Virus record (IMG/VR): IMGVR_UViG_3300041411_000080
Span: 186,001-250,000 of that record
DNA: 64,000 nucleotides
Direction: 5' to 3' (one strand)
The position numbers and the translations under genes are program-made. Numbering within the stretch: the first letter of the stretch is position 1; the number at the start of each line of letters is the position of its first letter. The notes beneath the pieces are model-generated. The model saw only the letters and a list, made by a program, of their open reading frames with translations. It made no database searches and was not told where the DNA came from. Positions 15,802 to 57,302 of the stretch are shown here, one piece after another.

Positions 15802-18726
15802 ATGAGCAGCTTTAAAGATAACCTTTACGAGGTTCTTCGTAACCCGGCACTGATCCAGTCGTTGATGTTAAACGAATTGGACTCACAGCTGAACCCCGAT
15901 CCAAATAACCCCACTTACGATATTCCAGATGGTAGTCTTCCTTTCGTATATCTGATGGAATGCGGTAGCATAGAAACAGCTGCTAACATCAGTGAGATTG
16001 AAGCGTTGATGCGTCGTCTGTATGCACGGCAAGCAATCACCCAAGACGAGCTGTACCTACACATGTCAGATGATGACTACTTGGGACGCTTCGCTATTCC
16101 TTCGAGTACGCCTTGGATGTTGATCCTTGACTACGATGAGGTCATTGCTAAGGCTGTGCCGTTTGGTGATCAGGGACTCAAGCGTTTGGTTATCCCACGA
16201 CTGACTCAATTCAGTGCTGGTGGTCTACCATTCACAATGCAGTATCCAATCCAAATGACCGTCATGCGTCATGGTGGTGTAACAGTCGAATACGTTCTGG
16301 ACAAGGAATCTCCTATCCAAGCGTTGACCACTAACATCGTTGAATGGGATATGATGATTTCTAAGGTGGACAATCAACGTCGCCGTTTGATGGCTATGAC
16401 CATCCCCGTCTACCAATTCCAAGTGCGTACCTATTCGGATGTACTTAACCCTGAAGACTTGTTCCAAACTGAGTACACCTTCGATAACCAGTTCTATTAC
16501 GCTCGAGCTTATATCTCCCGTGATAACGAACAGACGTGGGAAGAGATCAAAACGACTCACTCGGATCTGACGTACGACCCTATGGAACTCACCATGGTGT
16601 TTAAGGTTGTGAATAACTCCTTGAAGGTGAGTATCCCTACAGTTTACGTGACTACAGGTTTGGCTGAAGGTTCTATTCGGGTCGACATCTATACCACGTT
16701 GGGACCATTGGACCGTGACATGGGTAGCGTTCAAGATACGGACTTCAAAGTACAGTTCAATTCGATCGACGATGATAAAACCTTTACCGCTCCACTCGAT
16801 ACCCTGACGACCTGTCAACCATTGGCACGTCAACGTGTTACCGGTGGTGCAAGTGCGATGGCTTTTGATAAACTGCGTGAGCAAGTTATCAATAACACTT
16901 TGGGTCCAATGCAAGTTCCGATTACCAATGTGCAGTTGTCTGCTCAGTTGGATCGCCGTGGCTATGCACTGGTAACTAACGTCGATAACATCACCAATTT
17001 GGAATACCTCGCCTCACGTCGCCTAAGCACCCCTCAGGCGTTGGATGTAGTTTCTGGGGCAGGTGTAGCCATGTCACAGATTACGTTCAACATGGACAGT
17101 ATCTCGGGCTCTCAGCATGTATCTGACAACGGTCTTCGGCAAACTCTGCTCCCTTCGATGCTTTATGCATTTAATCAGGGTAAAGTCACGCCATTGACTG
17201 ACGCAGCTATTGAACGTTTGGATGGAATGACTGCTGAACAGCGTGCACGTGAGATGAACAACTCTCGTTATGTGTACTCGCCTTTCCATAACGTACTGGA
17301 TGCATCGAATAACAACTTCGACATGCGTCCTTACTACTTGGACAATCCAGTTATCACACAGAAACTGTTTGTGGGTGAGAACGACACCGCTAACTTGCAA
17401 GTAGCCATTAAAGAGTACGACGTATATCGCACTCCTAAAGGTTACGGTATCCGAATCAAATTGGAATCCGGTGAACAGTTCCGTAAGTTGGAAGATAACC
17501 AAATCGTAGTTCAGATTGGTTACCAACCAGATGGTGAAAATCGTTGGGCCTCGGTGAATGGTGTTCAGACTGGTATTCAAGACCAAGAACGTATCTTTGA
17601 GTTCAACATCGAATCCAACTTCGACTTGAATCAAGCGGGTGAACTTCGCACCACTAACATGAGTATGTTCAGTACTGTACAGAATGACTACTTTGTCAAA
17701 CTGTTGGCAGATCTGGATGTTACCGTTTGCGTGGTCAACTCTATCACTCCGGGTTACCAACCTAATGACCTTGATGAGATGGTTCAAGTACACTTGTTGC
17801 CAGCACAGTTCATGACTGTTACCCGTGAACGTCTTAAGGTCACGTTTGGTTACGACCTTACTCGTCTGTGGCGTCGTAGCCGTCCTGTACTGAGTTCTGA
17901 GAGCTATAAGAAGTATGACCATAACGTACCAGCCTACTACACTACTACGGTGTATGAGACTGATGCCAACGGCAACATCATTATCGAGATCAAACCTGAT
18001 GGTACTTTGGATTACAAGGTTCTCCATCGCGTAGGTGATCCGGTATTGGATGTCAATGGTAATCCAGTGTTCGATCATCGAGCTGGTGATCCTATCATCG
18101 ATGCTGATGGTAACCCTATCTTGCTGGAACCACGTAAGCTGTTGTATGAGACCACGTTGTTTATGGTTGATGGCTTGTTCTACTACGCTAATGAGCGTGA
18201 TGCTGCTAACTACGCCAAAGAGATCCCTATGGAAATCGTGACGTGGATTCAGAATGACATCGCAGCTCTCGATTCTCGGTTGTTGAGTGAGGCTGAGCTT
18301 TACCTCTATCCAACTACGACCTATGGTGAAACTGTAGCGAGTATCCGTGAAGGTCAACAGGTTACCATTCCTGTGGATCAAGCATTTAGTCTGAGTTTCT
18401 ACCTAAGTCGTTCGGGTTACACTAACCCAACGATTCGACCTAGTCTGATTGATAACGCTAAGTCGATCGTTAACGAACATCTGCAACGTAGCACTATCAG
18501 CATGTCTGACATTATTGCTAAGCTGAAGGAAACTTCTGGTGAAGACGTAATGGCTATCGAAGCAACTGGTTTGGGTGGGACTAACAACTTCACTATCTTG
18601 ACAGTTGAAGACGATGCAGTGCGGTTGGCTGTACGTAAGAAACTGGTAGTGTTGCCTAACCAAGAACTCACCGTTGAAGATGACGTTGTATTCAACTGGT
18701 ATCGCCACACGCTTGAACCCGTCTAA
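15802..18726 (+). CDS. Baseplate wedge protein, phiKZ gp87-like (T4 gp6-like; 974 aa)
   Basis: VTGGASAMAFDKLREQVI resembles the gp6/baseplate-J GG..E....R motif; size and synteny fit. Confidence 0.6.
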   Translation: MSSFKDNLYEVLRNPALIQSLMLNELDSQLNPDPNNPTYDIPDGSLPFVYLMECGSIETAANISEIEALMRRLYARQAITQDELYLHMSDDDYLGRFAIPSSTPWMLILDYDEVIAKAVPFGDQGLKRLVIPRLTQFSAGGLPFTMQYPIQMTVMRHGGVTVEYVLDKESPIQALTTNIVEWDMMISKVDNQRRRLMAMTIPVYQFQVRTYSDVLNPEDLFQTEYTFDNQFYYARAYISRDNEQTWEEIKTTHSDLTYDPMELTMVFKVVNNSLKVSIPTVYVTTGLAEGSIRVDIYTTLGPLDRDMGSVQDTDFKVQFNSIDDDKTFTAPLDTLTTCQPLARQRVTGGASAMAFDKLREQVINNTLGPMQVPITNVQLSAQLDRRGYALVTNVDNITNLEYLASRRLSTPQALDVVSGAGVAMSQITFNMDSISGSQHVSDNGLRQTLLPSMLYAFNQGKVTPLTDAAIERLDGMTAEQRAREMNNSRYVYSPFHNVLDASNNNFDMRPYYLDNPVITQKLFVGENDTANLQVAIKEYDVYRTPKGYGIRIKLESGEQFRKLEDNQIVVQIGYQPDGENRWASVNGVQTGIQDQERIFEFNIESNFDLNQAGELRTTNMSMFSTVQNDYFVKLLADLDVTVCVVNSITPGYQPNDLDEMVQVHLLPAQFMTVTRERLKVTFGYDLTRLWRRSRPVLSSESYKKYDHNVPAYYTTTVYETDANGNIIIEIKPDGTLDYKVLHRVGDPVLDVNGNPVFDHRAGDPIIDADGNPILLEPRKLLYETTLFMVDGLFYYANERDAANYAKEIPMEIVTWIQNDIAALDSRLLSEAELYLYPTTTYGETVASIREGQQVTIPVDQAFSLSFYLSRSGYTNPTIRPSLIDNAKSIVNEHLQRSTISMSDIIAKLKETSGEDVMAIEATGLGGTNNFTILTVEDDAVRLAVRKKLVVLPNQELTVEDDVVFNWYRHTLEPV

Positions 18727-18727
18727 G

Positions 18728-18769
18728 ACGACATATTGCCCCTGCTTAATCGCAGGGGCTTTATGCTGT
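18728..18769. terminator. Bidirectional hairpin terminator; inverted near-copy of 26061-26102
   Basis: GCCCCTGC-TTAATC-GCAGGGGC between convergent genes; 41/42 identical to the reverse complement of 26061-26102. Confidence 0.8.
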
Positions 18770-20016
18770 TACATACCCATCTTCTTAAGAATCTCATCCC
18801 AGATCTTATTCAACTTAGTTACCACTACGCGCTTAACGTCTTCATCACCATTCTTAGCAATTTGATCCATCAGGACCTCACGACCACGAATGTAGAAGTT
18901 AGCCATAGTTGCAGAAGCTTTGTAGTAATCTGCGTAGAGTTTCTGCTTGAAGGTGATTACACGTTCCAAACCATGGATACAGCCAGTGATGTTCTCAACG
19001 GTCTGCACCAAGATATCTACTTCTTTCAGGTCATCGAAATTAGCGTTACGTTTGATGTTACGCATTTCTTTTGCCAGACGTTGTACTTGAATGATGTTGT
19101 GCGATGGTGCATACACAGGTCGACCAACCAAACGCTTCGGATGCATCCAGAACTCTGTACCCAGATGAGTAAAGAAGAAGTCAACATCGTCTTCAGCTAC
19201 TTGAAGTTCTTCGAGAGCTTCAGCGGTAACATGTAGATCAGTTGCAAAGTCAATACCGATCGCCATTGGTTTGTTCTGTTCGATGTGAGTCTTCAGGGAA
19301 GCCACGTCTTTCATCAACAGGTTAAAGGTGTAATCGATATCTTTGTCCGCATGGACAATAACCGAGTCTTTACCCTTAACGCCAAATGCAATCAGCATGG
19401 ACTCACTACGAGTCAACTTAGGATCGCTCAGTACTTGCTTAGCGATAGCGGTCATCTCTGGAAGCATGTCCACACCAGCCAGCTTGTTACGTACCAGACA
19501 ATCATTGAATGCGTTGTACATGGATTGCAGGTTAGAATCCAGAGCTTTCAACCGCATGCGGATAGTGTTCTCTGAGTTCCATACCACACGACACCAGTCA
19601 ACCAGCTTAATGACGTAGTCCAAGAACTTGAAGAACCACTCTTTCAAAGTAGTCCCGATCTCAGCCAAGGTAGCCTCTTGCGAAACGACTTGGTTAATCA
19701 TTGTACGGTTAGGTGTAAACATTCCCTCATAAGCTTCCAAAGCAACCTTTGGAGAGAGGGTCATAAACGGGGACATTCGATCACGGATACTACGCAGTGC
19801 TTTGATATCAGCAGCCGATACACCTTCATGGGAGATGGTGTGGTAGAGGTCACGTGTAGCCTTCAGGCATTCAACGGTAACAGCCAATGCTTGACCGGCG
19901 TCAACGTCACTTACCTCGTTTGGTGTAACTGGTTCTTCGGAGTGTTCTTCCAACTTATCCAGTACAGCATCGAGGGATTGGACTTGTTCGTCCAGAATTT
20001 GATCTTCAGTCAGCAT
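18769..20016 (-). CDS. Head protein with propeptide, phiKZ gp86-like (415 aa)
   Basis: KVALEAY and VSQE sites after an acidic N-terminus; synteny. Confidence 0.5.
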   Translation of the reverse strand: MLTEDQILDEQVQSLDAVLDKLEEHSEEPVTPNEVSDVDAGQALAVTVECLKATRDLYHTISHEGVSAADIKALRSIRDRMSPFMTLSPKVALEAYEGMFTPNRTMINQVVSQEATLAEIGTTLKEWFFKFLDYVIKLVDWCRVVWNSENTIRMRLKALDSNLQSMYNAFNDCLVRNKLAGVDMLPEMTAIAKQVLSDPKLTRSESMLIAFGVKGKDSVIVHADKDIDYTFNLLMKDVASLKTHIEQNKPMAIGIDFATDLHVTAEALEELQVAEDDVDFFFTHLGTEFWMHPKRLVGRPVYAPSHNIIQVQRLAKEMRNIKRNANFDDLKEVDILVQTVENITGCIHGLERVITFKQKLYADYYKASATMANFYIRGREVLMDQIAKNGDEDVKRVVVTKLNKIWDEILKKMGM

Positions 20017-20311
20017 TGCCGACCTCCTTTAGTTTATCTGCATGTAACTTCTTTCGAAGGTCATACATCTCGAGCCGGATAATCTCATTGATGATCTTAG
20101 CTCGTGCGATTTGTGTTCCGCGTTCAGGATCAAACGTTTTATAGTTAGCGACGATTGCATCAGCAACCAATCGCTCACCATTCTTAAGTCTGACCATTAC
20201 GACCACCACTGACATATCAGTATCAATGATGATCTTCTCCATGGCGATAAGAGCTTTAGCGGTGGCTTTAGTAATACGAGGGTGACGGGGGTTGTCATCG
20301 CTGGTATCCAT
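20006..20311 (-). CDS. Phage Gp49/66-family protein (PF13876-like), putative Acb4-like nucleotide sponge
   Basis: Matches the family pattern VVVMVRLKNG...NYKTFDPERGTQIARAKI...LEMYDLRKKL; RBS AGGGAG. Confidence 0.6.
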   Translation of the reverse strand: MDTSDDNPRHPRITKATAKALIAMEKIIIDTDMSVVVVMVRLKNGERLVADAIVANYKTFDPERGTQIARAKIINEIIRLEMYDLRKKLHADKLKEVGNAD

Positions 20312-20322
20312 AGCCTACTCCC

Positions 20323-20763
20323 TTAGCCTTCGCTTGCGAGCGTCGACAGAACCATACGCATACCGTTCTGGGCACGCATGAATTCAAGGTTAGTGAGCAG
20401 TGCAGTGGCAGCAACGGTCTCAGCACCAGTCTGATGTTGTTCAGCGGTGTGGGACTTCATAGCGGCTTCCATGATGGAGATATCGCAACCACCAACAATC
20501 AGTTCGTGACGGATAGAAATAACCTGCTTGAAGATTTCCAGAGCCAGTTTAGAGTCCAGCGAGATGTTCTCGTTGATCTGGCTAATTACCTTACGTGCTT
20601 CATCAGCATAATCGGCAGCGTTGTCGATAGCAGACTTAGCTGGGTCGATAGGGAAGTGATAACCCAGAGCGTTAGCAACCATCATAGCCCGAAGGATGCG
20701 GTCATTGCCTTCCTGGGTCTTTACTTCTTTCAGGTATTTCGAGATTTCATAACCAATACGCAT
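20323..20763 (-). CDS. Conserved virion-associated protein, phiKZ gp85-like (146 aa)
   Basis: ORF coupled to its neighbours; synteny. Confidence 0.45.
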   Translation of the reverse strand: MRIGYEISKYLKEVKTQEGNDRILRAMMVANALGYHFPIDPAKSAIDNAADYADEARKVISQINENISLDSKLALEIFKQVISIRHELIVGGCDISIMEAAMKSHTAEQHQTGAETVAATALLTNLEFMRAQNGMRMVLSTLASEG

Positions 20764-20775
20764 TGTGAGGTACCT

Positions 20776-22044
20776 TTACAGTTTACGGAGTTTGTGTGCC
20801 TGTAGGAACAGGTCGTTGTTCATGAGTGATTCTAAATCATCTTCAACCTTAGTATTCTGTCGTTGCTTACGCAGATCAGGGCGGAAGAAATTAACAAAAC
20901 TTTCGATTACCGAAGTGTTAGTAGAATACTCTTTGACGATAGCGTCAATAGCATCGATGTCAGCTGTGATTTCATCACGACTAAGTGGACCAGGATTCTT
21001 TAGTTGAGCAATCAGGTCACGGCGTACTCGGATGTTACGCGTCATTGGGTCATCGTAACGTGCAGCTGTTCCATCATGGATCAGAGGATCGTACATGATC
21101 ATCCCGATTACAGCTACCGGTAACAAGACCAAGCTAACTAGGACCTTTGCTGTTTCAGCATACCAACGGCGCCCATGCAGTTGTGGGTCACCGTAGTGGC
21201 GGTCATGCTTATAGTTACTACTCACCAGATACTTGCCATAACCTAGACGAGTAGCGAACATATCGGCAAGCTGCTCTTCACGACGGTTAGCCATGATGGG
21301 GTTATTGGTTAGGTGGTGCCGTGGTGCACCCTTCAGCAAGCTGAGTATAACCCGCTTAGCATTCTCTTCAGTTTTACCGCTCATGAACTCATCACGGATA
21401 TCCTGAGGAACGTTCTCGTCAATCCAACGTTGGTTAAAGATATCCAACTTGAGTTTGTTAGGCTTTTTGCCCAATAGGATTTCGATACCGTCTGTCAGAT
21501 AGTAGTTCAACCAGATGTAATCACCTAGAGTCATGAACGTATTGAAGATGTGACCGAACTCATGGAGTAGTGTTGCAATCAGTTCGTTCTGAGTATAGAA
21601 CTCTGGATTGAAGAAGATCCAATCTGTAAAGAACAGTTTAAACGAAAGTAGTTCAGCTAGAGAGCCTTTGACTGTTACGTTCTTAAGGTCGATCTCTAAC
21701 ACTTGATGTAACGATACACTATCGTCAGATACGATTTTGTATGCTGGATCAGCGTAGTACCTTGAACCTGAGTGACCATTGAACCACATTGCAGATATCA
21801 CACCTGCGGATGGTCCATCGATGGTAAACATGTCGATCGTTATATTGACTCCGACTACACGCTTAACGTCTTTAATAAACTTAGAGCTGATCTTACCCAT
21901 GTCGTCATAGAGAGTAGTGGGTTGGTCATGTGGATAAGTAGGCCATAGTGCACGCACATCCTTCACGTAGGTCTCTACCAACTTCACCAAGGGTGTCTTT
22001 GCTCCAATGGCTAGCATCTCTAATGAGATAATTTCTTTGTACAT
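20776..22044 (-). CDS. Putative zinc metalloprotease (zincin, M48-like) in the virion gene cluster (422 aa)
   Basis: TLLHEFGHIF (HExxH), downstream REEQLADMFA..LGYG third-ligand motif, and a hydrophobic segment VLVSLVLLPVAVIGMIM. Confidence 0.65.
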   Translation of the reverse strand: MYKEIISLEMLAIGAKTPLVKLVETYVKDVRALWPTYPHDQPTTLYDDMGKISSKFIKDVKRVVGVNITIDMFTIDGPSAGVISAMWFNGHSGSRYYADPAYKIVSDDSVSLHQVLEIDLKNVTVKGSLAELLSFKLFFTDWIFFNPEFYTQNELIATLLHEFGHIFNTFMTLGDYIWLNYYLTDGIEILLGKKPNKLKLDIFNQRWIDENVPQDIRDEFMSGKTEENAKRVILSLLKGAPRHHLTNNPIMANRREEQLADMFATRLGYGKYLVSSNYKHDRHYGDPQLHGRRWYAETAKVLVSLVLLPVAVIGMIMYDPLIHDGTAARYDDPMTRNIRVRRDLIAQLKNPGPLSRDEITADIDAIDAIVKEYSTNTSVIESFVNFFRPDLRKQRQNTKVEDDLESLMNNDLFLQAHKLRKL

Positions 22045-22259: not shown

Positions 22260-24365
22260 ATGAGCGAAGATTTCAAACAGGAAGATGTGGTAGGCATTGA
22301 AGCCAAACACATTACCTTTGTAAGTGAACGTGGTGGTCGTAATGACATGCACGTTGTGAAAGAAGTTGTACACCTTAAGGACAAGCGTAGGATTAGTCGA
22401 ATCAAAATGATTCCTAACTACGAAAGACCTTTCTATATCGATCCAGCAGTTTACAAAGAAGAACGACTGAGACCGTACAAAGAGAAGAAGGACTATATGC
22501 CGCTGAATAAGCTGCGTAAGTTCATGACTACTCAGTCTAAGATGCCATTTGCAGTAGCAAAGGCTTTGAAAGATTACAGCATGGGACCTAACCCAAGGAT
22601 GCGACAGTTAAGTCGTAGCCCTTACCTTTATGGCTCTGACGTAAGTTCTGTATGCTGCTTGAAGAACGACTATCGGACCGACTATCCGGGATTGATCTCA
22701 CGTAACACCGTAGCAGGTGGCGACATCGAGACCAACGTATACGAAGATGAGAACGATGGGCAGATCATCTGTATGTCTGTTACTCACAAGTCTAACGTAT
22801 ACCTTGCTTATCTGCGTCATTGGGTACAAGACCTTAAAGATCCCATTAAAGAAACGTTTGAAGAACTCGAACGTATTCCTGAATTGGTTACACTGCGTAA
22901 AGCGCGTAACCTGAACATTCAGATCGAAGTAGTAGAGACTCCAGCTGATATCGTTATTCAGTGCATGAAGCGATTGCATGAATGGAAGCCTGACTTCTTT
23001 GCCTTCTGGAACATCGACTTCGACATGTCCAAAATCTTGGCTACGTTGGAGCGTTATGGGATTGATCCAGCTGACGTGTTCAGTGATCCTAATGTCCCTA
23101 AACAGTTTAAGTACTTCCACTATCGTCAAGACCAAGCGATGAACACCACAGCTTCTGGTGTGACTAAGTCTAAAGGTCCAGAAGATCAGTGGCATTGGAT
23201 TACAGCTCCAGCTAGTTTCCAATGCATCGACTCTATGTCTACGTATCGCGTTACTCGTTTGGCTAAGGGTAAGGAATCCAGTTATGCGTTAGATGCAATC
23301 CTTCGTAAAGAACTAAGCGTGGATGAAGAGTCTGAGATTAAGACAGAAGAAGAACTCAAAGCCTTCATTAAGAACGCTAACAAAGCAATGGAAGACCGTT
23401 CGGGTAGTCACCCTTACTGGAGCGTATCGAACCCAGCTGAAGATGTTATCACAACCGAGACCGTTACTGAGACTATTGAAGTTGAAGACGACGATGAGGA
23501 AGAGACTGAGGAAGGGGAAGATGATGACACCGTACCAGACTTCGATGATGACGATACTGTATCAGCGATCTATGAATTCGAAGAACACACGTACGAAGTA
23601 GAACACCGTGAGCCAGTATGGAAATCGGTTGATGAACTCGTATGGGGTGTTAACGTTTTTGAAGGTTACAAGGTTAGCTTTAAGCTGAACTTTGGTAAGT
23701 TGAAGTTTGCAGAAACCGACCACCTGTTCGGGATCGAATGGCACAAAGTGATGCAGACCCAACATAAGGTCCGCTACGGTCTTTACAACATCATCGACAG
23801 TATTCGACTAGAACAACTCGATGAGAAGATCAATGACTTGGCCAGTTCGATTACATTGTTCTCTAAGTCTTCGGACTTTAAGAACTTTAACTCGAACCCT
23901 AAGCGACTCTGTGACGACATGCACTTCTGGTACCTTAACCGACCAGAGCCATGTGTGATTGGTTCTAGTTCTGACCAGATGGTTCATGACTTAGACAAAT
24001 ACGTTGTGGGTCATGATGGGTGGATCGTTACACTGCCTTCCTATATGGCAGGTCCTAATGGTGTTAAGTGTGTTAAAGACTTACCGGACTATCGTTCGTT
24101 GATCTGGACACACGTAGCTGACTTGGACATCGTATCGACTTACCCTAACGTTAGTCAGATCCTGAACATTGCTCGTGAAACTACGGTTATGGAAACTGCT
24201 GCCATCCAAGGCATTAGCGATCACCATAAACGTGAGCTGGGTGTTAACCTGACGGGTTGCCGTGTGAACGTTCTGGAGATTGGCCAGAAGATTCTTAAGG
24301 CTCCACGCTTGGATGTTATCCTTGCAGCTTATCTTGCCTCTAAAGAAACTGAAGTCCCAAAGTAA
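22260..24365 (+). CDS. Split family-B DNA polymerase, exonuclease plus motif-A subunit (phiKZ gp82-like; 701 aa)
   Basis: ExoI GGDIETN, ExoII FWNIDFD, ExoIII YNIIDS and Pol region II DLDIVSTYP. Motifs B and C are absent, consistent with the split polymerase of these phages. Confidence 0.85.
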   Translation: MSEDFKQEDVVGIEAKHITFVSERGGRNDMHVVKEVVHLKDKRRISRIKMIPNYERPFYIDPAVYKEERLRPYKEKKDYMPLNKLRKFMTTQSKMPFAVAKALKDYSMGPNPRMRQLSRSPYLYGSDVSSVCCLKNDYRTDYPGLISRNTVAGGDIETNVYEDENDGQIICMSVTHKSNVYLAYLRHWVQDLKDPIKETFEELERIPELVTLRKARNLNIQIEVVETPADIVIQCMKRLHEWKPDFFAFWNIDFDMSKILATLERYGIDPADVFSDPNVPKQFKYFHYRQDQAMNTTASGVTKSKGPEDQWHWITAPASFQCIDSMSTYRVTRLAKGKESSYALDAILRKELSVDEESEIKTEEELKAFIKNANKAMEDRSGSHPYWSVSNPAEDVITTETVTETIEVEDDDEEETEEGEDDDTVPDFDDDDTVSAIYEFEEHTYEVEHREPVWKSVDELVWGVNVFEGYKVSFKLNFGKLKFAETDHLFGIEWHKVMQTQHKVRYGLYNIIDSIRLEQLDEKINDLASSITLFSKSSDFKNFNSNPKRLCDDMHFWYLNRPEPCVIGSSSDQMVHDLDKYVVGHDGWIVTLPSYMAGPNGVKCVKDLPDYRSLIWTHVADLDIVSTYPNVSQILNIARETTVMETAAIQGISDHHKRELGVNLTGCRVNVLEIGQKILKAPRLDVILAAYLASKETEVPK
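24356..24362 (+). other. Candidate -1 ribosomal frameshift site C CCA AAG
   Basis: Canonical X XXY YYZ heptamer in phase with the last two polymerase codons, followed immediately by TAA; the -1 frame is open for 125 codons. Confidence 0.55.
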
Positions 24366-55406: not shown

Positions 55407-57302
55407 TTAGTAGAAGCTACCAACGCTCGAGTTGTACTGAGGACCGTAGCCTTGTTGCTGACCACCGTACTGTTGTACTTGTGCGGTACCACCAACCTGG
55501 AACTGGTTGATTACCGAGTTACCGGTGAAGCGCTGACCCGAGTTCAGTACCGAAGTGTTGTCCATGGTTACGGACAGGCCAACTGCTACGATAGCAGCGT
55601 CCAGTGCTTCGATGAACTTAGGGTTGAAGGTGCAACGTTCGGCTTTGCCAGTGTAGGTAACAGTGCTACCCAGGTACTGACGGTCGAAGTTACGGCTCTG
55701 CTTAGCACGCTGATCCGGGTGGATGTTGGTGTTCTGCTGCGAACCGTAGTAAGCCCACCATTCGTTCAGGTTACCTTCCGATGCGTTCAGGGCACCGAGG
55801 TTGTCCAGTTCACGACGGTCACGCTTCTCGCCATCTTCGTCGAGGTAGTGACCCAGATCGATAGTCTGACCAGTCTTAACCAGAATCGGCTGAGTGGTGT
55901 AGTCGAAGAACTTACCGAAGTCTACGCCCAGCAGGTTGGTGATCTGACGAACTGCGGTTGCTACTGCTTTCTGTTGGTTCTCACCACCAGCAGCGTCCAA
56001 CAGCATGCCATCGATCGGACCGTTCTCACCCAGACGGTTGAGGTCGATCTGGAACACTGGCTTGTCTTTGATCATGCTTACGGTCAGCATGCCGAACTGA
56101 GCATCGTCGAACGATGCAGCCTTGGTGTCGATCTTGTTCTGAAGCTGCGACAGCCAGCCCAGAGCACCGATATCACGCAGGTCTTTAGCCTTACCAGTTT
56201 GTGGCAGGAATGGACGAGCCCAAGCGTGACCGTGAGTTGCACGGTATGCGTTAGACAGAGCCAACCAGTACATTTCTGGAGTGTTGGCCTGAATGCCATC
56301 AGCGTTACGTACGTCGGTGATTACGACAGCAGCGGTGCACGGTGGAACCGGCTGACCTACTTGCTGACCTGCACCGAAGAAGTTGCTCTGTTGAGCTTGC
56401 TGCTGGTACTCGAGGTTGGTGAACATCGACACTTGGTTCAGCTTGACGTCAGTCTCGTAGAACTCGTTGTCCTGCTGTTGGCCTTGACGACGAACACGCT
56501 GCATGCCTACAACCACGTCGGAACGGATTGGGTTACCCAGAGTATCGGTAACGGTCAGGTCACGGGTGTCGATCTTGGCAGCCAGAGTTTCTTCTTGGCC
56601 TTTCAGCATGCTGATGGTGAATGGCTTCTCACCGCTACGACGTTGCAGGTGATCTTCACAGGCGTTAACCGATTTGATCAGCAGAGCACGCAGTTGCAGT
56701 TCGGAATCCTTCAGGACCAGATCAGCAGGGATTGGGAAAGCACCAGCCAGAACGACTTCAGCGTTAGGCTTGCTCAGAGCAGCTTGCACGTAGGCAACCA
56801 GCTTACCGTGGTACTTCTTGCTGAATACGTCACCAACCGAAACTTCGGTTTCGATGACTTCTTGATGCATGCCGTTTTGCAGAGTGATCTTGCGGGTCGG
56901 CAGTTCGATCGATGCGTTCGGCATGATCAGAGGACGGATCACGATCAGAGCCTTACCGTTGATGGTGGCTGCTTTAGCGATGATCAGCGAGGACCAACCC
57001 ACTTGGTTTTGGTCACGGTCGAAACGCAGAATGCTGAAGTCGTCCTTCAGGTCTTGCGATTCTACAGCCTGAGCTTTCAGGCGGTTGAAGAGTTGCAGTG
57101 CTTCGCTCGAACGAGCGTCGCCACCTTGAGTCTTACCGGAACGCTCGAAGTTCGAGTTCAGGTCACGACCAGCGAATTGGTTTTGTTGCACTTGTGGTTG
57201 TTCCATTTGAGGCGCCTGCGTTTGTGGTGGTGCTTGGGTAACTGGAGCTTGTTGAACTGGTGCTTGAGTTTGGGTGGCACCGGTGTCTTTGTCACGAATC
57301 AT
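55407..57302 (-). CDS. chmA: Chimallin, major phage nuclear-shell protein (201phi2-1 gp105 / phiKZ gp54 homolog; 631 aa)
   Basis: GGDARSSEAL, DDFSILRFDRD, FYETDVKLNQV, GIQANTPEMYW, YLGSTVTYTGKAERC and the C-terminal SFY all match the recalled 201phi2-1 chimallin. Confidence 0.97.
   Translation of the reverse strand: MIRDKDTGATQTQAPVQQAPVTQAPPQTQAPQMEQPQVQQNQFAGRDLNSNFERSGKTQGGDARSSEALQLFNRLKAQAVESQDLKDDFSILRFDRDQNQVGWSSLIIAKAATINGKALIVIRPLIMPNASIELPTRKITLQNGMHQEVIETEVSVGDVFSKKYHGKLVAYVQAALSKPNAEVVLAGAFPIPADLVLKDSELQLRALLIKSVNACEDHLQRRSGEKPFTISMLKGQEETLAAKIDTRDLTVTDTLGNPIRSDVVVGMQRVRRQGQQQDNEFYETDVKLNQVSMFTNLEYQQQAQQSNFFGAGQQVGQPVPPCTAAVVITDVRNADGIQANTPEMYWLALSNAYRATHGHAWARPFLPQTGKAKDLRDIGALGWLSQLQNKIDTKAASFDDAQFGMLTVSMIKDKPVFQIDLNRLGENGPIDGMLLDAAGGENQQKAVATAVRQITNLLGVDFGKFFDYTTQPILVKTGQTIDLGHYLDEDGEKRDRRELDNLGALNASEGNLNEWWAYYGSQQNTNIHPDQRAKQSRNFDRQYLGSTVTYTGKAERCTFNPKFIEALDAAIVAVGLSVTMDNTSVLNSGQRFTGNSVINQFQVGGTAQVQQYGGQQQGYGPQYNSSVGSFY

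What the first reader, a model, noticed from the sequence alone, without database searches (positions are those of the whole stretch)
20006..20311. Divergent Gp49/Acb4-like nucleotide sponge inserted among head genes
Seen: the Gp49/66 pattern is intact, but the usual G.SAC and LEGY positions read ADAIV and LEMY. Established (recalled): Acb4, a 3'3'-cGAMP sponge against CBASS, belongs to this family, and the phage nucleus does not protect against signal-based abortive defences. Inference: an anti-CBASS or other anti-signal sponge, possibly with altered ligand specificity.
Basis: partly seen in the sequence, partly recalled or inferred. Interest (0 to 1): 0.6.

Follow-up and report, generated by a model that had tools for sequence, protein, structure and literature searches.

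The report
Acb4-family sponge gene in jumbo phage
A 101-residue gene in a nucleus-forming Pseudomonas-type jumbo phage belongs to the Acb4 family of proteins that soak up bacterial alarm nucleotides, but it is an old, conserved resident of these phages with a remodelled binding pocket, so what it binds is untested.

Summary
The ORF at 20006-20311 (- strand, 101 aa) is a real gene. It has its own Shine-Dalgarno site, dN/dS of 0.11-0.28, and at least 20 full-length orthologues. It matches Pfam PF13876 above the curated cut-off (35.3 bits against 27). Chang et al. (bioRxiv 2024.12.30.630793) define PF13876 as the Acb4 anti-CBASS sponge family.

The AlphaFold model finds SPO1 Acb4 (9E4W) as its best PDB match. 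A four-copy model scores ipSAE 0.81 against 0.20 for the best control, and it shows the two interfaces described for the Acb4 tetramer.

ADAIV and LEMY replace the usual GESAC and LEGY. AIVAN occurs in 5 of the 1,331 listed family members.

The gene is not a recent insertion. It sits in the same slot, between phiKZ gp85-like and gp86-like virion genes, in 201phi2-1, PhiPA3, PA1C, Phabio, Psa21, RVTF4 and Noxifer. It is absent from phiKZ. Several of these orthologues are already listed as Acb4 homologues in Chang et al. Table S3.

Three pocket positions that are conserved family-wide differ here: the stacking aromatic, a hydrophobic Ile/Leu and the Gly of LEGY. Sponge function is likely, but the ligand is unknown. 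This is a new member of a known kind, of moderate interest.

The parts
20006..20311 (-). Coding sequence of the Acb4-family (PF13876) protein, 101 aa. It is the orthologue of 201phi2-1 gp147 and PhiPA3 gp088.
   Evidence: ORF; Pfam 35.3 bits against cut-off 27; orthologues at 50-89% identity; dN/dS 0.11-0.28; fold best matches 9E4W; predicted tetramer.
20318..20325 (-). Shine-Dalgarno site TAAGGGAG, 6 nt before the ATG. Its TAA is the stop codon of the upstream gp85-like gene.
   Evidence: Read from the sequence. Function is inferred.
20270..20281 (-). PRIT motif (residues 11-14), invariant in the clade and common across the family. Residue 13 touches residues 55 and 82 of another protomer in the tetramer model.
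20171..20176 (-). Residues E46-R47, aligned with SPO1 Acb4 F48 and E49 (the guanine-stacking and guanine-reading residues). The aromatic is lost here (clade: H11, Q7, E1, R1). R47 is invariant.
   Evidence: hhalign and MAFFT agree; column counts; family counts NGF 933, NGY 106, NGW 27 of 1,331.
20144..20164 (-). Beta-3 strand motif ADAIVAN (residues 50-56), which replaces the usual G-E-S-A-C. AIVAN is invariant in 20 of 20 clade members. V54 corresponds to SPO1 V56 in the adenine pocket.
20117..20134 (-). Beta-3/alpha-4 loop FDPERG (residues 60-65). F60 corresponds to SPO1 F62 and D61 to N63. R64 replaces the hydrophobic I66 (clade: R13, K7).
20063..20074 (-). LEMY (residues 80-83), which replaces LEGY. 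L80 and Y83 sit at the predicted 'joint' interface between dimers. M82 replaces Gly and touches residues 13 and 55 of another protomer.
20023..20029 (-). Shine-Dalgarno site AAGGAGG of the downstream gp86-like gene, embedded in the K-E-V codons of the Acb4-like tail. The two genes overlap by 11 nt (20006-20016).
   Evidence: Read from the sequence. Translational coupling is inferred.
18769..22044 (-). Probable four-gene transcription unit: gp84-like (20776-22044), gp85-like (20323-20763), Acb4-like, and gp86-like (18769-20016). Gaps or overlaps between genes are 12 nt or less.
   Evidence: Co-transcription is inferred from spacing and has not been measured.
18738..18759 (.). GC-rich hairpin (8 pairs, 7 of them G-C) between the convergent gp86-like and gp87-like genes. 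It is the likely end of the transcription unit.
   Evidence: pattern match only.

Best explanation
The gene encodes a small cytoplasmic protein of the Acb4 (PF13876) family. It most likely assembles into a pinwheel-like homotetramer and acts as a sponge, sequestering a host nucleotide immune signal (a CBASS-type cyclic di- or trinucleotide is the most likely) so that the abortive-infection effector is not switched on. It is made from the same transcription unit as virion proteins. It is vertically inherited in Pseudomonas chimalliviruses. Its pocket differs from tested Acb4 proteins at three positions that are conserved across the family, so the ligand range is probably shifted. What is shown: family membership, fold likeness, a predicted Acb4-like tetramer, purifying selection and conserved synteny. 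What is inferred: nucleotide binding, the identity of the ligand, anti-defence activity and expression timing.
For: PF13876 matches above the gathering score. PF13876 is the Acb4 family, whose founder binds 3'3'-cGAMP as a 4:4 tetramer, and all eight purified homologues bound 3'3'-cGAMP. N4 Acb4 and the Ab09 Acb4-Sequestin fusion are functional sponges. Foldseek ranks 13 chains of 9E4W first in the PDB (TM 0.61/0.65, rmsd 2.2 A over 73 columns, E 5e-3). VIA-align gives Z 7.7 and rmsd 2.5 A over 74 residues. The four-copy model scores ipSAE 0.81 against a best control of 0.20; runs agree in at least 81% of contacts, and partner pLDDT is at least 81. That mark was reached by 20 of 30 proteins solved as pairs of one chain and by 1 of 23 solved as single chains. 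The modelled interfaces are a beta-sheet sandwich (residues 24-53) and a joint (43-46 with 80-91), matching the two described for SPO1 Acb4. Retained pocket positions are V54, F60 and D61, corresponding to SPO1 V56, F62 and N63. Invariant basic residues are R12, R47, R70 and K72, with R/K at 64. dN/dS is 0.11-0.28. 201phi2-1 gp147 was not found in virions by mass spectrometry, although gp145, gp146 and gp148-151 were. This argues against a structural role. A small-molecule target would fit the high conservation: 55% identity to PhiPA3 against 30% for the neighbouring gene.
Against: No binding or anti-defence data exist for any member of this clade. The stacking aromatic (SPO1 F48; F/Y/W in about 80% of the family by rough motif count) is E here and H or Q in the clade. 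The hydrophobic I66 is R/K. The Gly of LEGY is M/L/H/Y in all chimallivirus members. The monomer fold is a common alpha-beta-beta-beta-alpha arrangement, and RF2, hibernation factors and dsRBDs score nearly as well. The tetramer score may partly reflect the model's memory of 9E4W, and the ligand was not scored. Placement inside a virion-gene unit is unusual for an anti-defence gene. No RNA data exist.
Confidence: 0.6

Rival explanations
1. The Acb4 fold has been retooled and no longer acts as a sponge. Instead it serves as a small assembly or chaperone factor for the neighbouring head-associated virion proteins (gp85-like and gp86-like), made in step with them but not packaged.
For: The slot between the gp85-like and gp86-like genes is fixed in at least seven phage lineages. 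The gene overlaps the downstream gene by 11 nt and carries that gene's Shine-Dalgarno site. Conservation is stronger than in the neighbours, and inheritance looks vertical, which is unlike typical fast-turnover anti-defence genes. Three family-conserved pocket positions have been changed.
Against: phiKZ builds the same virion with adjacent gp85 and gp86 and has no PF13876 gene anywhere in its genome, so the protein is dispensable for assembly. The clade's invariant residues include a set of basic and polar positions outside the predicted subunit interfaces (R12, N56, R70, K72), as expected for a ligand pocket. All tested family members are sponges.
Confidence: 0.15
2. It is an RNA- or ribosome-binding protein of the dsRBD or hibernation-factor type, acting on translation or on exported phage mRNA rather than on small signals.
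For: The monomer model aligns with an RF2 domain (Z 7.8), HPF/YfiA (Z 5.3-6.1) and dsRBDs (Z 4.3-5.7). The core is basic, with pI 9.8 for residues 11-90. Chang et al. propose that Acb4 derives from a dsRBD.
Against: Sequence places it in PF13876, not in any dsRBD or HPF family. The predicted tetramer buries the beta-sheet face. These structural likenesses were also reported for SPO1 Acb4, which is a proven sponge. Z values under 8 are common for unrelated small alpha/beta folds (note).
Confidence: 0.08
3. It is a canonical Acb4 with essentially the same specificity as the tested Gram-negative homologues (3'3'-cGAMP and 3'3'-c-di-AMP). On this view the motif differences are neutral drift.
For: All eight diverse homologues bound 3'3'-cGAMP despite low identity. 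Functional N4 Acb4 shares only F48, F62 and N63 with the SPO1 contact residues, so polar contacts are poorly conserved in working sponges. A55 and I68 match the general family consensus rather than SPO1.
Against: The positions changed here are exactly those conserved between SPO1 and N4 and across most of the family: the aromatic after the N-G turn, the hydrophobic residue before the loop Gly, and the Gly of LEGY. The replacements themselves are conserved within the clade (R47, AIVAN, R/K64, M/L82), which points to selection rather than drift.
Confidence: 0.15
4. It is a chance ORF or a decaying remnant.
For: None beyond its small size.
Against: The Pfam match is above the cut-off. The ORF is full-length in at least 20 lineages at 50-89% identity, dN/dS is well below 1, and it has its own ribosome-binding site.
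Confidence: 0.01

Closest known systems
Bacillus phage SPO1 Acb4 (PDB 9E4W), founder of the Acb4/PF13876 sponge family
   Same: Same Pfam family. Similar size (96 and 101 aa). Same alpha-beta-beta-beta-alpha protomer, and the best PDB fold match. The predicted tetramer has the same two interface types. V56, F62 and N63 correspond to V54, F60 and D61 here, and a basic residue sits at the K81 position in this copy.
   Different: BLASTP finds no similarity, and hhalign gives only E 0.013. The guanine-pocket residues K36, F48 and E49 read S34, E46 and R47. I66 reads R64. The phosphate contacts Y57 and T70 read A55 and I68. SPO1 lacks the PRIT motif. The host is Gram-positive. The SPO1 gene is not in a virion-gene unit.
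Escherichia phage N4 Acb4 (gp48), with relatives in Bas69 and Pseudomonas phage Ab09 (gp59, an Acb4-Sequestin fusion)
   Same: Same family, from Gram-negative hosts. Shares the PR(I/V)T-type N-terminal motif, the N-G turn, the F-[ND]-x-E-x-G loop and LE.Y. These proteins are proven sponges: N4 Acb4 binds c-di-AMP at 111 nM, and the Acb4 domain of Ab09 gp59 is a tetramer.
   Different: N4 reads NGF...GKSAC...ELG...LEGY, where this protein reads NGE...ADAIV...ERG...LEMY. N4-like phages carry the gene in an anti-signalling hot spot next to replication genes, often fused to Sequestin or Tad2. Here the protein stands alone inside a virion-gene unit, and no PF11195 (Tad2) or PF21825 (Sequestin) match was found in the genome (the PF21825 search rang in none of its control genomes, so it is not informative).
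201phi2-1 gp147, PhiPA3 gp088, and the PA1C, Phabio, Psa21, RVTF4 and Noxifer homologues (uncharacterised)
   Same: These are orthologues at 39-58% identity by tblastn (34% over a shorter stretch for RVTF4; the Noxifer copy was found only by the Pfam profile). They occupy the same slot between gp85-like and gp86-like genes and overlap the downstream gene. The 201phi2-1, PhiPA3, PA1C and Phabio group shares the AIVAN motif. The 201phi2-1, PhiPA3, PA1C, Phabio, Psa21 and Noxifer proteins are already listed among the 1,331 Acb4 homologues.
   Different: This copy is from an uncultured rhizosphere or soil phage. It has E at position 46 where most of the clade has H or Q. None has been tested, so they add no functional information.
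Other phage signal sponges: Acb2, Tad1, Tad2, Sequestin
   Same: They are likewise small homo-oligomers with pockets at protomer interfaces. phiKZ orf184 is called tad1, and this genome has a homologue of it outside the window.
   Different: The folds and families are unrelated.

Membership tests
Acb4 / Pfam PF13876 (Phage_gp49_66) | Match to the PF13876 profile above the curated gathering score | tested here: met
   35.3 bits against 27, E 1.7e-8, covering profile positions 1-82 of 82. The six-frame genome search gives E 5e-9.
Acb4 / Pfam PF13876 | Small phage-encoded protein (about 100 aa) with an N-terminal helix, three antiparallel strands and a long C-terminal helix, like 9E4W | tested here: met
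   The AF2 model (pLDDT 77.6) has H15-20, E22-30, E35-42, E47-53 and H62-98. 9E4W chains are Foldseek ranks 1-13. VIA-align gives Z 7.7, rmsd 2.5 A over 74 residues, which is tied with generic folds, so the fold alone is not decisive.
Acb4 / Pfam PF13876 | [quoted passage not shown] | tested here: met
   Prediction only. ipSAE is 0.81 against a best control of 0.20. That mark was reached by 20 of 30 proteins solved as pairs of one chain and 1 of 23 solved as single chains. Contact agreement is at least 81% and partner pLDDT at least 81. Interface residues are 24-53, and 43-46 with 80-91, compared with the description. The score may partly reflect memory of 9E4W.
Acb4 / Pfam PF13876 | Nucleobase pocket residues: an aromatic after the N-G turn (SPO1 F48), hydrophobic residues at V56, F62 and I66, and a small residue in LEGY | tested here: inconclusive
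   V54 and F60 are kept. The aromatic is E (clade H/Q), I66 is R/K, and Gly is M. Polar contacts are not conserved even between the functional SPO1 and N4 proteins, so identity at these sites does not decide function.
Acb4 / Pfam PF13876 | High-affinity binding of 3'3'-cGAMP or related cyclic dinucleotides, without binding c-di-GMP | not testable with these tools
   The ligand in the complex model is not scored and no coordinates are returned. No published data for this clade were found.
Acb4 / Pfam PF13876 | Rescue of phage replication on CBASS-carrying hosts | not testable with these tools
   This needs plaque assays.
dsRBD / ribosome hibernation factor (HPF, YfiA) | Profile match to the family, and an exposed RNA-binding face | tested here: not met
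   There is no Pfam match other than PF13876, even at E up to 10. The likeness is structural only, at Z 4.3-6.1. The sheet face is buried in the predicted tetramer.

The most novel reading that the evidence does not exclude
Pseudomonas chimalliviruses carry a distinct, vertically inherited Acb4 subclade whose remodelled, more basic pocket (aromatic changed to H/Q/E, Ile changed to R/K, Gly changed to a bulky residue, invariant R47) binds a different immune signal than the tested Acb4 proteins. One candidate is the cA3 of type III-C CBASS or type III CRISPR with NucC, which is known to act on nucleus-forming phages. Alternatively, the pocket has lost c-di-AMP binding and so escapes sponge-sensing guards (Panoptes, PanDA). 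Co-expression with virion proteins would time the sponge to late, structural-protein-triggered signalling.
Probability: 0.3. Interest if true: 0.6.

Novelty: new member of a known kind. Interest (0 to 1): 0.35.

Why it matters
Nucleus-forming jumbo phages shield their DNA from nucleases, but the shell cannot stop defences that act through diffusible signals and kill the cell. Knowing which signal sponges these phages carry helps explain their host range. This gene shows that an Acb4-family protein is a long-standing part of most Pseudomonas chimallivirus genomes other than phiKZ, and that it sits beside a Tad1-like gene elsewhere in the genome. Its conserved pocket changes make the clade a good, cheap test of how Acb4 specificity evolves, using orthologues from cultured phages (201phi2-1 gp147, PhiPA3 gp088). 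If it binds the usual ligands, this is a routine annotation.

Tried and rejected
- **BLASTP against SPO1 Acb4:** no alignment.
- **PDB sequence searches:** neither the single protein nor the clade profile reached 9E4W; only chance hits appeared, such as beta-lactamase and S15. Only the Pfam profile, the fold search and a weak hhalign hit (E 0.013, probability 3.3%) link the two proteins.
- **Recent horizontal insertion:** rejected. Synteny is conserved, GC and GC3 equal those of the neighbours, and conservation is higher than in the neighbours.
- **Virion component:** unlikely, because 201phi2-1 gp147 was not seen by mass spectrometry although its neighbours were.
- **Fusion partners or other sponges:** no PF11195 (Tad2) or PF21825 (Sequestin) match in the genome. 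The PF21825 search rang in no control genome, so that blank is weak.
- **Expression evidence:** the stretch occurs in rhizosphere, plant and soil metagenomes of 14 studies, but no RNA run holds it.
- **Sigma-70 promoter scan:** gave fewer hits than shuffles, and it is not meaningful for phage-RNAP promoters.
- **Literature:** nothing found on gp147, gp088 or Acb4 in jumbo phages.
- **Identity of the eight homologues purified by Chang et al.:** given only in a figure, so I cannot tell whether a chimallivirus member was among them.
- **Pocket geometry and ligand docking:** could not be examined, because the tools return no coordinates and do not score the ligand.
Full report
**1. The observation**

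The ORF at window 20006-20311 on the - strand encodes 101 residues. It matches Pfam PF13876 (Phage_gp49_66) over the whole 82-position profile, with E 1.7e-8 and 35.3 bits against a curated cut-off of 27. It also matches phrog_322 at 6.6e-19.

A six-frame search of the whole genome finds this single copy at E 5e-9. The genome is a 320,858-bp virus record with direct terminal repeats, and the window is positions 186001-250000.

They are unusual for the family. In the 1,331 PF13876 sequences of Chang et al. Table S3, GESAC occurs 504 times and LEGY 649 times. AIVAN occurs 5 times and LEMY 4 times.

**2. The gene is real and under selection**

- A Shine-Dalgarno site, TAAGGGAG, lies 6 nt upstream of the ATG.
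- A word search found 21 relatives, all carrying PF13876 where they were scored. Twenty full-length proteins, this one included, at 50-89% identity to it, were aligned.
- Invariant positions in that alignment include PRIT (11-14), M33, N44, R47, AIVAN (52-56), F60, G65, A69-R70, K72, E81 and Y83.
- Pairwise dN/dS is 0.11-0.28 wherever dS is not saturated.
- GC (0.451) and GC3 (0.471) equal those of the neighbours.

**3. The genome and the neighbourhood**

The nearest cultured relative is Pseudomonas phage 201phi2-1, with 77% DNA identity in the polymerase gene. A chimallin (nuclear shell) homologue with 66% identity to 201phi2-1 gp105 lies in the window at 55407-57302 on the - strand. This is therefore a nucleus-forming chimallivirus. 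The stretch occurs in rhizosphere, plant and soil metagenomes.

The gene is the third of four tightly packed genes on the - strand:

| Gene | Coordinates |
|---|---|
| gp84-like | 20776-22044 |
| gp85-like | 20323-20763 |
| Acb4-like | 20006-20311 |
| gp86-like | 18769-20016 |

A GC-rich hairpin at 18738-18759 follows the last gene. The gp86-like gene overlaps the Acb4-like gene by 11 nt. Its Shine-Dalgarno site, AAGGAGG, lies in the K-E-V codons of the Acb4-like tail.

The two direct flanks fall in PHROGs classed as 'head and packaging'. The phiKZ record notes gp83-86 as 'structural head protein'. The convergent neighbour at 15802-18726 is the homologue of phiKZ gp87, which is a baseplate wedge protein.

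**4. The gene is not a recent insertion**

An orthologue sits in the same slot, usually overlapping the downstream gene, in:
- 201phi2-1 (gp147), PhiPA3 (gp088), the PA1C group, Phabio and Viktualia;
- Psa21 (gp095), RVTF4 (already annotated 'N4 Gp49/Sf6 gene 66 family') and Noxifer (gp086).

phiKZ has gp85 and gp86 10 nt apart and has no PF13876 match anywhere in its genome.

Against PhiPA3, this protein keeps 55% identity while the neighbouring gp86-like protein keeps 30%. So the gene is an old, well-conserved resident, and it was lost or never gained in Phikzvirus.

201phi2-1 gp147 was not detected in virions by mass spectrometry, although gp145, gp146 and gp148-151 were.

**5. The family link to Acb4**

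Chang et al. (bioRxiv 10.1101/2024.12.30.630793) show the following:
- SPO1 Acb4 belongs to PF13876.
- It forms a pinwheel-like tetramer that binds four 3'3'-cGAMP molecules (PDB 9E4W).
- All eight purified homologues bound 3'3'-cGAMP.
- Homologues from Gram-negative hosts also bound 3'3'-c-di-AMP, and none bound c-di-GMP.

Their Table S3 already lists the 201phi2-1, PhiPA3, PA1C, Phabio, Psa21 and Noxifer proteins. The text does not say which eight homologues were purified.

Other work adds context:
- N4 Acb4 binds c-di-AMP at 111 nM and triggers the guard systems Panoptes and PanDA.
- Ab09 gp59 is an Acb4-Sequestin fusion, and its Acb4 domain is a tetramer.
- Acb4 is often fused to Tad2 or Sequestin.

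I found no paper that links Acb4 to jumbo phages, or that mentions gp147 or gp088.

**6. Structure**

The AlphaFold2 model, built on the 20-sequence alignment, has mean pLDDT 77.6. Its elements are helix 15-20, strands 22-30, 35-42 and 47-53, and helix 62-98.

Foldseek against the PDB puts 13 chains of 9E4W first: TM 0.61/0.65, rmsd 2.2 A over 73 columns, E 5e-3, probability 1.0. VIA-align gives 9E4W Z 7.7 with rmsd 2.5 A over 74 residues, aligning model 13-88 with chain 15-90. This is tied with an RF2 domain (Z 7.8, rmsd 4.5 A) and ahead of hibernation factors and dsRBDs. These are the same likenesses Chang et al. report for Acb4 itself. The monomer fold alone is therefore not decisive.

A four-copy complex model, with 3'3'-cGAMP riding along unscored, gave these figures:
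- ipSAE 0.81 against a best control of 0.20;
- the mark was reached by 20 of 30 proteins solved as pairs of one chain, and by 1 of 23 solved as single chains;
- runs agree in at least 81% of contacts;
- partner pLDDT is at least 81.

[quoted passage not shown] These correspond to the 'beta-sandwich' and 'joint' interfaces described for SPO1 Acb4. L80 and Y83 of LEMY lie in the joint. M82 touches residues 13 and 55 of another protomer. The pass may partly reflect the model's memory of 9E4W. It shows likeness, not binding.

**7. The pocket**

BLASTP finds nothing between this protein and SPO1 Acb4. However, hhalign (E 0.013; residues 35-80 aligned without gaps to SPO1 37-82), MAFFT with N4 and other members and the structural ranges all give the same register.

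| SPO1 residue | Role in SPO1 | This protein | N4 Acb4 |
|---|---|---|---|
| K36 | guanine pocket | S34 | T |
| F48 | guanine pocket (stacking) | E46 | F |
| E49 | guanine pocket | R47 | T |
| V56 | adenine pocket | V54 | C |
| F62 | adenine pocket | F60 | F |
| N63 | adenine pocket | D61 | N |
| I66 | adenine pocket | R64 | L |
| Y57 | phosphate contact | A55 | V |
| T70 | phosphate contact | I68 | Y |
| K81 | phosphate contact | R79 | E |

The polar contacts of SPO1 are thus not conserved even in a proven sponge. A55 and I68 match the general family consensus, not a loss.

What does set this clade apart are three positions shared by SPO1, N4 and most of the family:
- **The aromatic after the N-G turn.** Rough motif counts in Table S3 are NGF 933, NGY 106 and NGW 27 of 1,331. 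Here it is E, and in the clade H11, Q7, E1, R1.
- **The hydrophobic residue before the loop Gly.** Here it is R13/K7.
- **The Gly of LEGY.** Here it is M17/L3. It is H in Psa21 and RVTF4, and Y in Noxifer.

R47 is invariant. Invariant basic or polar residues outside the predicted interfaces (R12, N56, R70, K72) are candidates for ligand contacts; this is inference. The core (residues 11-90) has pI 9.8. The replacements are themselves conserved, so they look selected rather than decayed.

**8. Interpretation**

The best-supported reading (about 0.6) is a tetrameric Acb4-family sponge for a host nucleotide immune signal, with an unresolved and probably shifted ligand range.

Context supports the need for such a protein. 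Signal-based systems with the NucC effector act on phiKZ-like phages. phiKZ resists type III-C CBASS only with the help of Nlp1, and phiKZ orf184 is called tad1. This genome also has a homologue of orf184 at G000:C1:80494-80859, with 52% identity over residues 109-230. The Acb4-like gene would therefore be a second sponge, not a substitute.

The rivals are:
- a canonical cGAMP and c-di-AMP specificity (0.15);
- a retooled assembly helper for the neighbouring virion proteins (0.15), weakened by phiKZ doing without the gene;
- an RNA- or ribosome-binding role (0.08);
- a spurious ORF (0.01).

**9. Verdict**

'Inserted' is misleading. Function and ligand remain inferences.

Because close orthologues are already listed as Acb4 homologues, this is a new member of a known kind. 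The untested, clade-wide pocket remodelling and the fixed place in a virion-gene unit give it moderate interest (0.35).

No genetic code other than table 11 was needed.

Noticed in passing
window 55407-57302 (-): A chimallin (phage nuclear shell protein) homologue, 631 aa, with 66% identity to 201phi2-1 gp105. It confirms that the genome is a nucleus-forming chimallivirus.
   Followed up: yes
window 20021-20029 (-): The conserved K-E-V near the C-terminus of the Acb4-like protein is encoded by AAGGAGGT, which is the Shine-Dalgarno site of the overlapping downstream gp86-like gene. Conservation of the tail may therefore reflect the RBS rather than the protein.
   Followed up: partly
G000:C1:80494-80859 (-), outside the window (locus L024): A homologue of phiKZ orf184, which a 2025 preprint calls tad1 (a signal sponge). 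It has 52% identity over residues 109-230 in a 233-aa open frame. The phage may therefore carry two sponge families. Pfam has no model matching phiKZ gp184.
   Followed up: partly
window 15802-18726 (+): This 974-aa ORF is the homologue of phiKZ gp87 and 201phi2-1 gp149. The phiKZ cryo-EM atlas shows gp87 to be a baseplate wedge protein, so the 'head gene' block abuts a tail gene.
   Followed up: partly
window 22260-24365 (+), about residues 410-440 of the product: The DNA polymerase (phiKZ gp82-like) has a highly acidic D/E-rich stretch. 201phi2-1 gp144 shares it, but it is largely absent from the shorter PhiPA3 polymerase.
   Followed up: partly
window 18738-18759: A perfect 8-bp GC-rich hairpin (GCCCCTGC...GCAGGGGC) lies between convergent genes. 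It is a likely bidirectional terminator.
   Followed up: no
locus L006 (phiKZ 83216-84944): phiKZ gp85 and gp86 are separated by 10 nt with no gene between them, and phiKZ has no PF13876 match in six frames. Among the Pseudomonas chimalliviruses checked, only phiKZ lacks the gene.
   Followed up: yes
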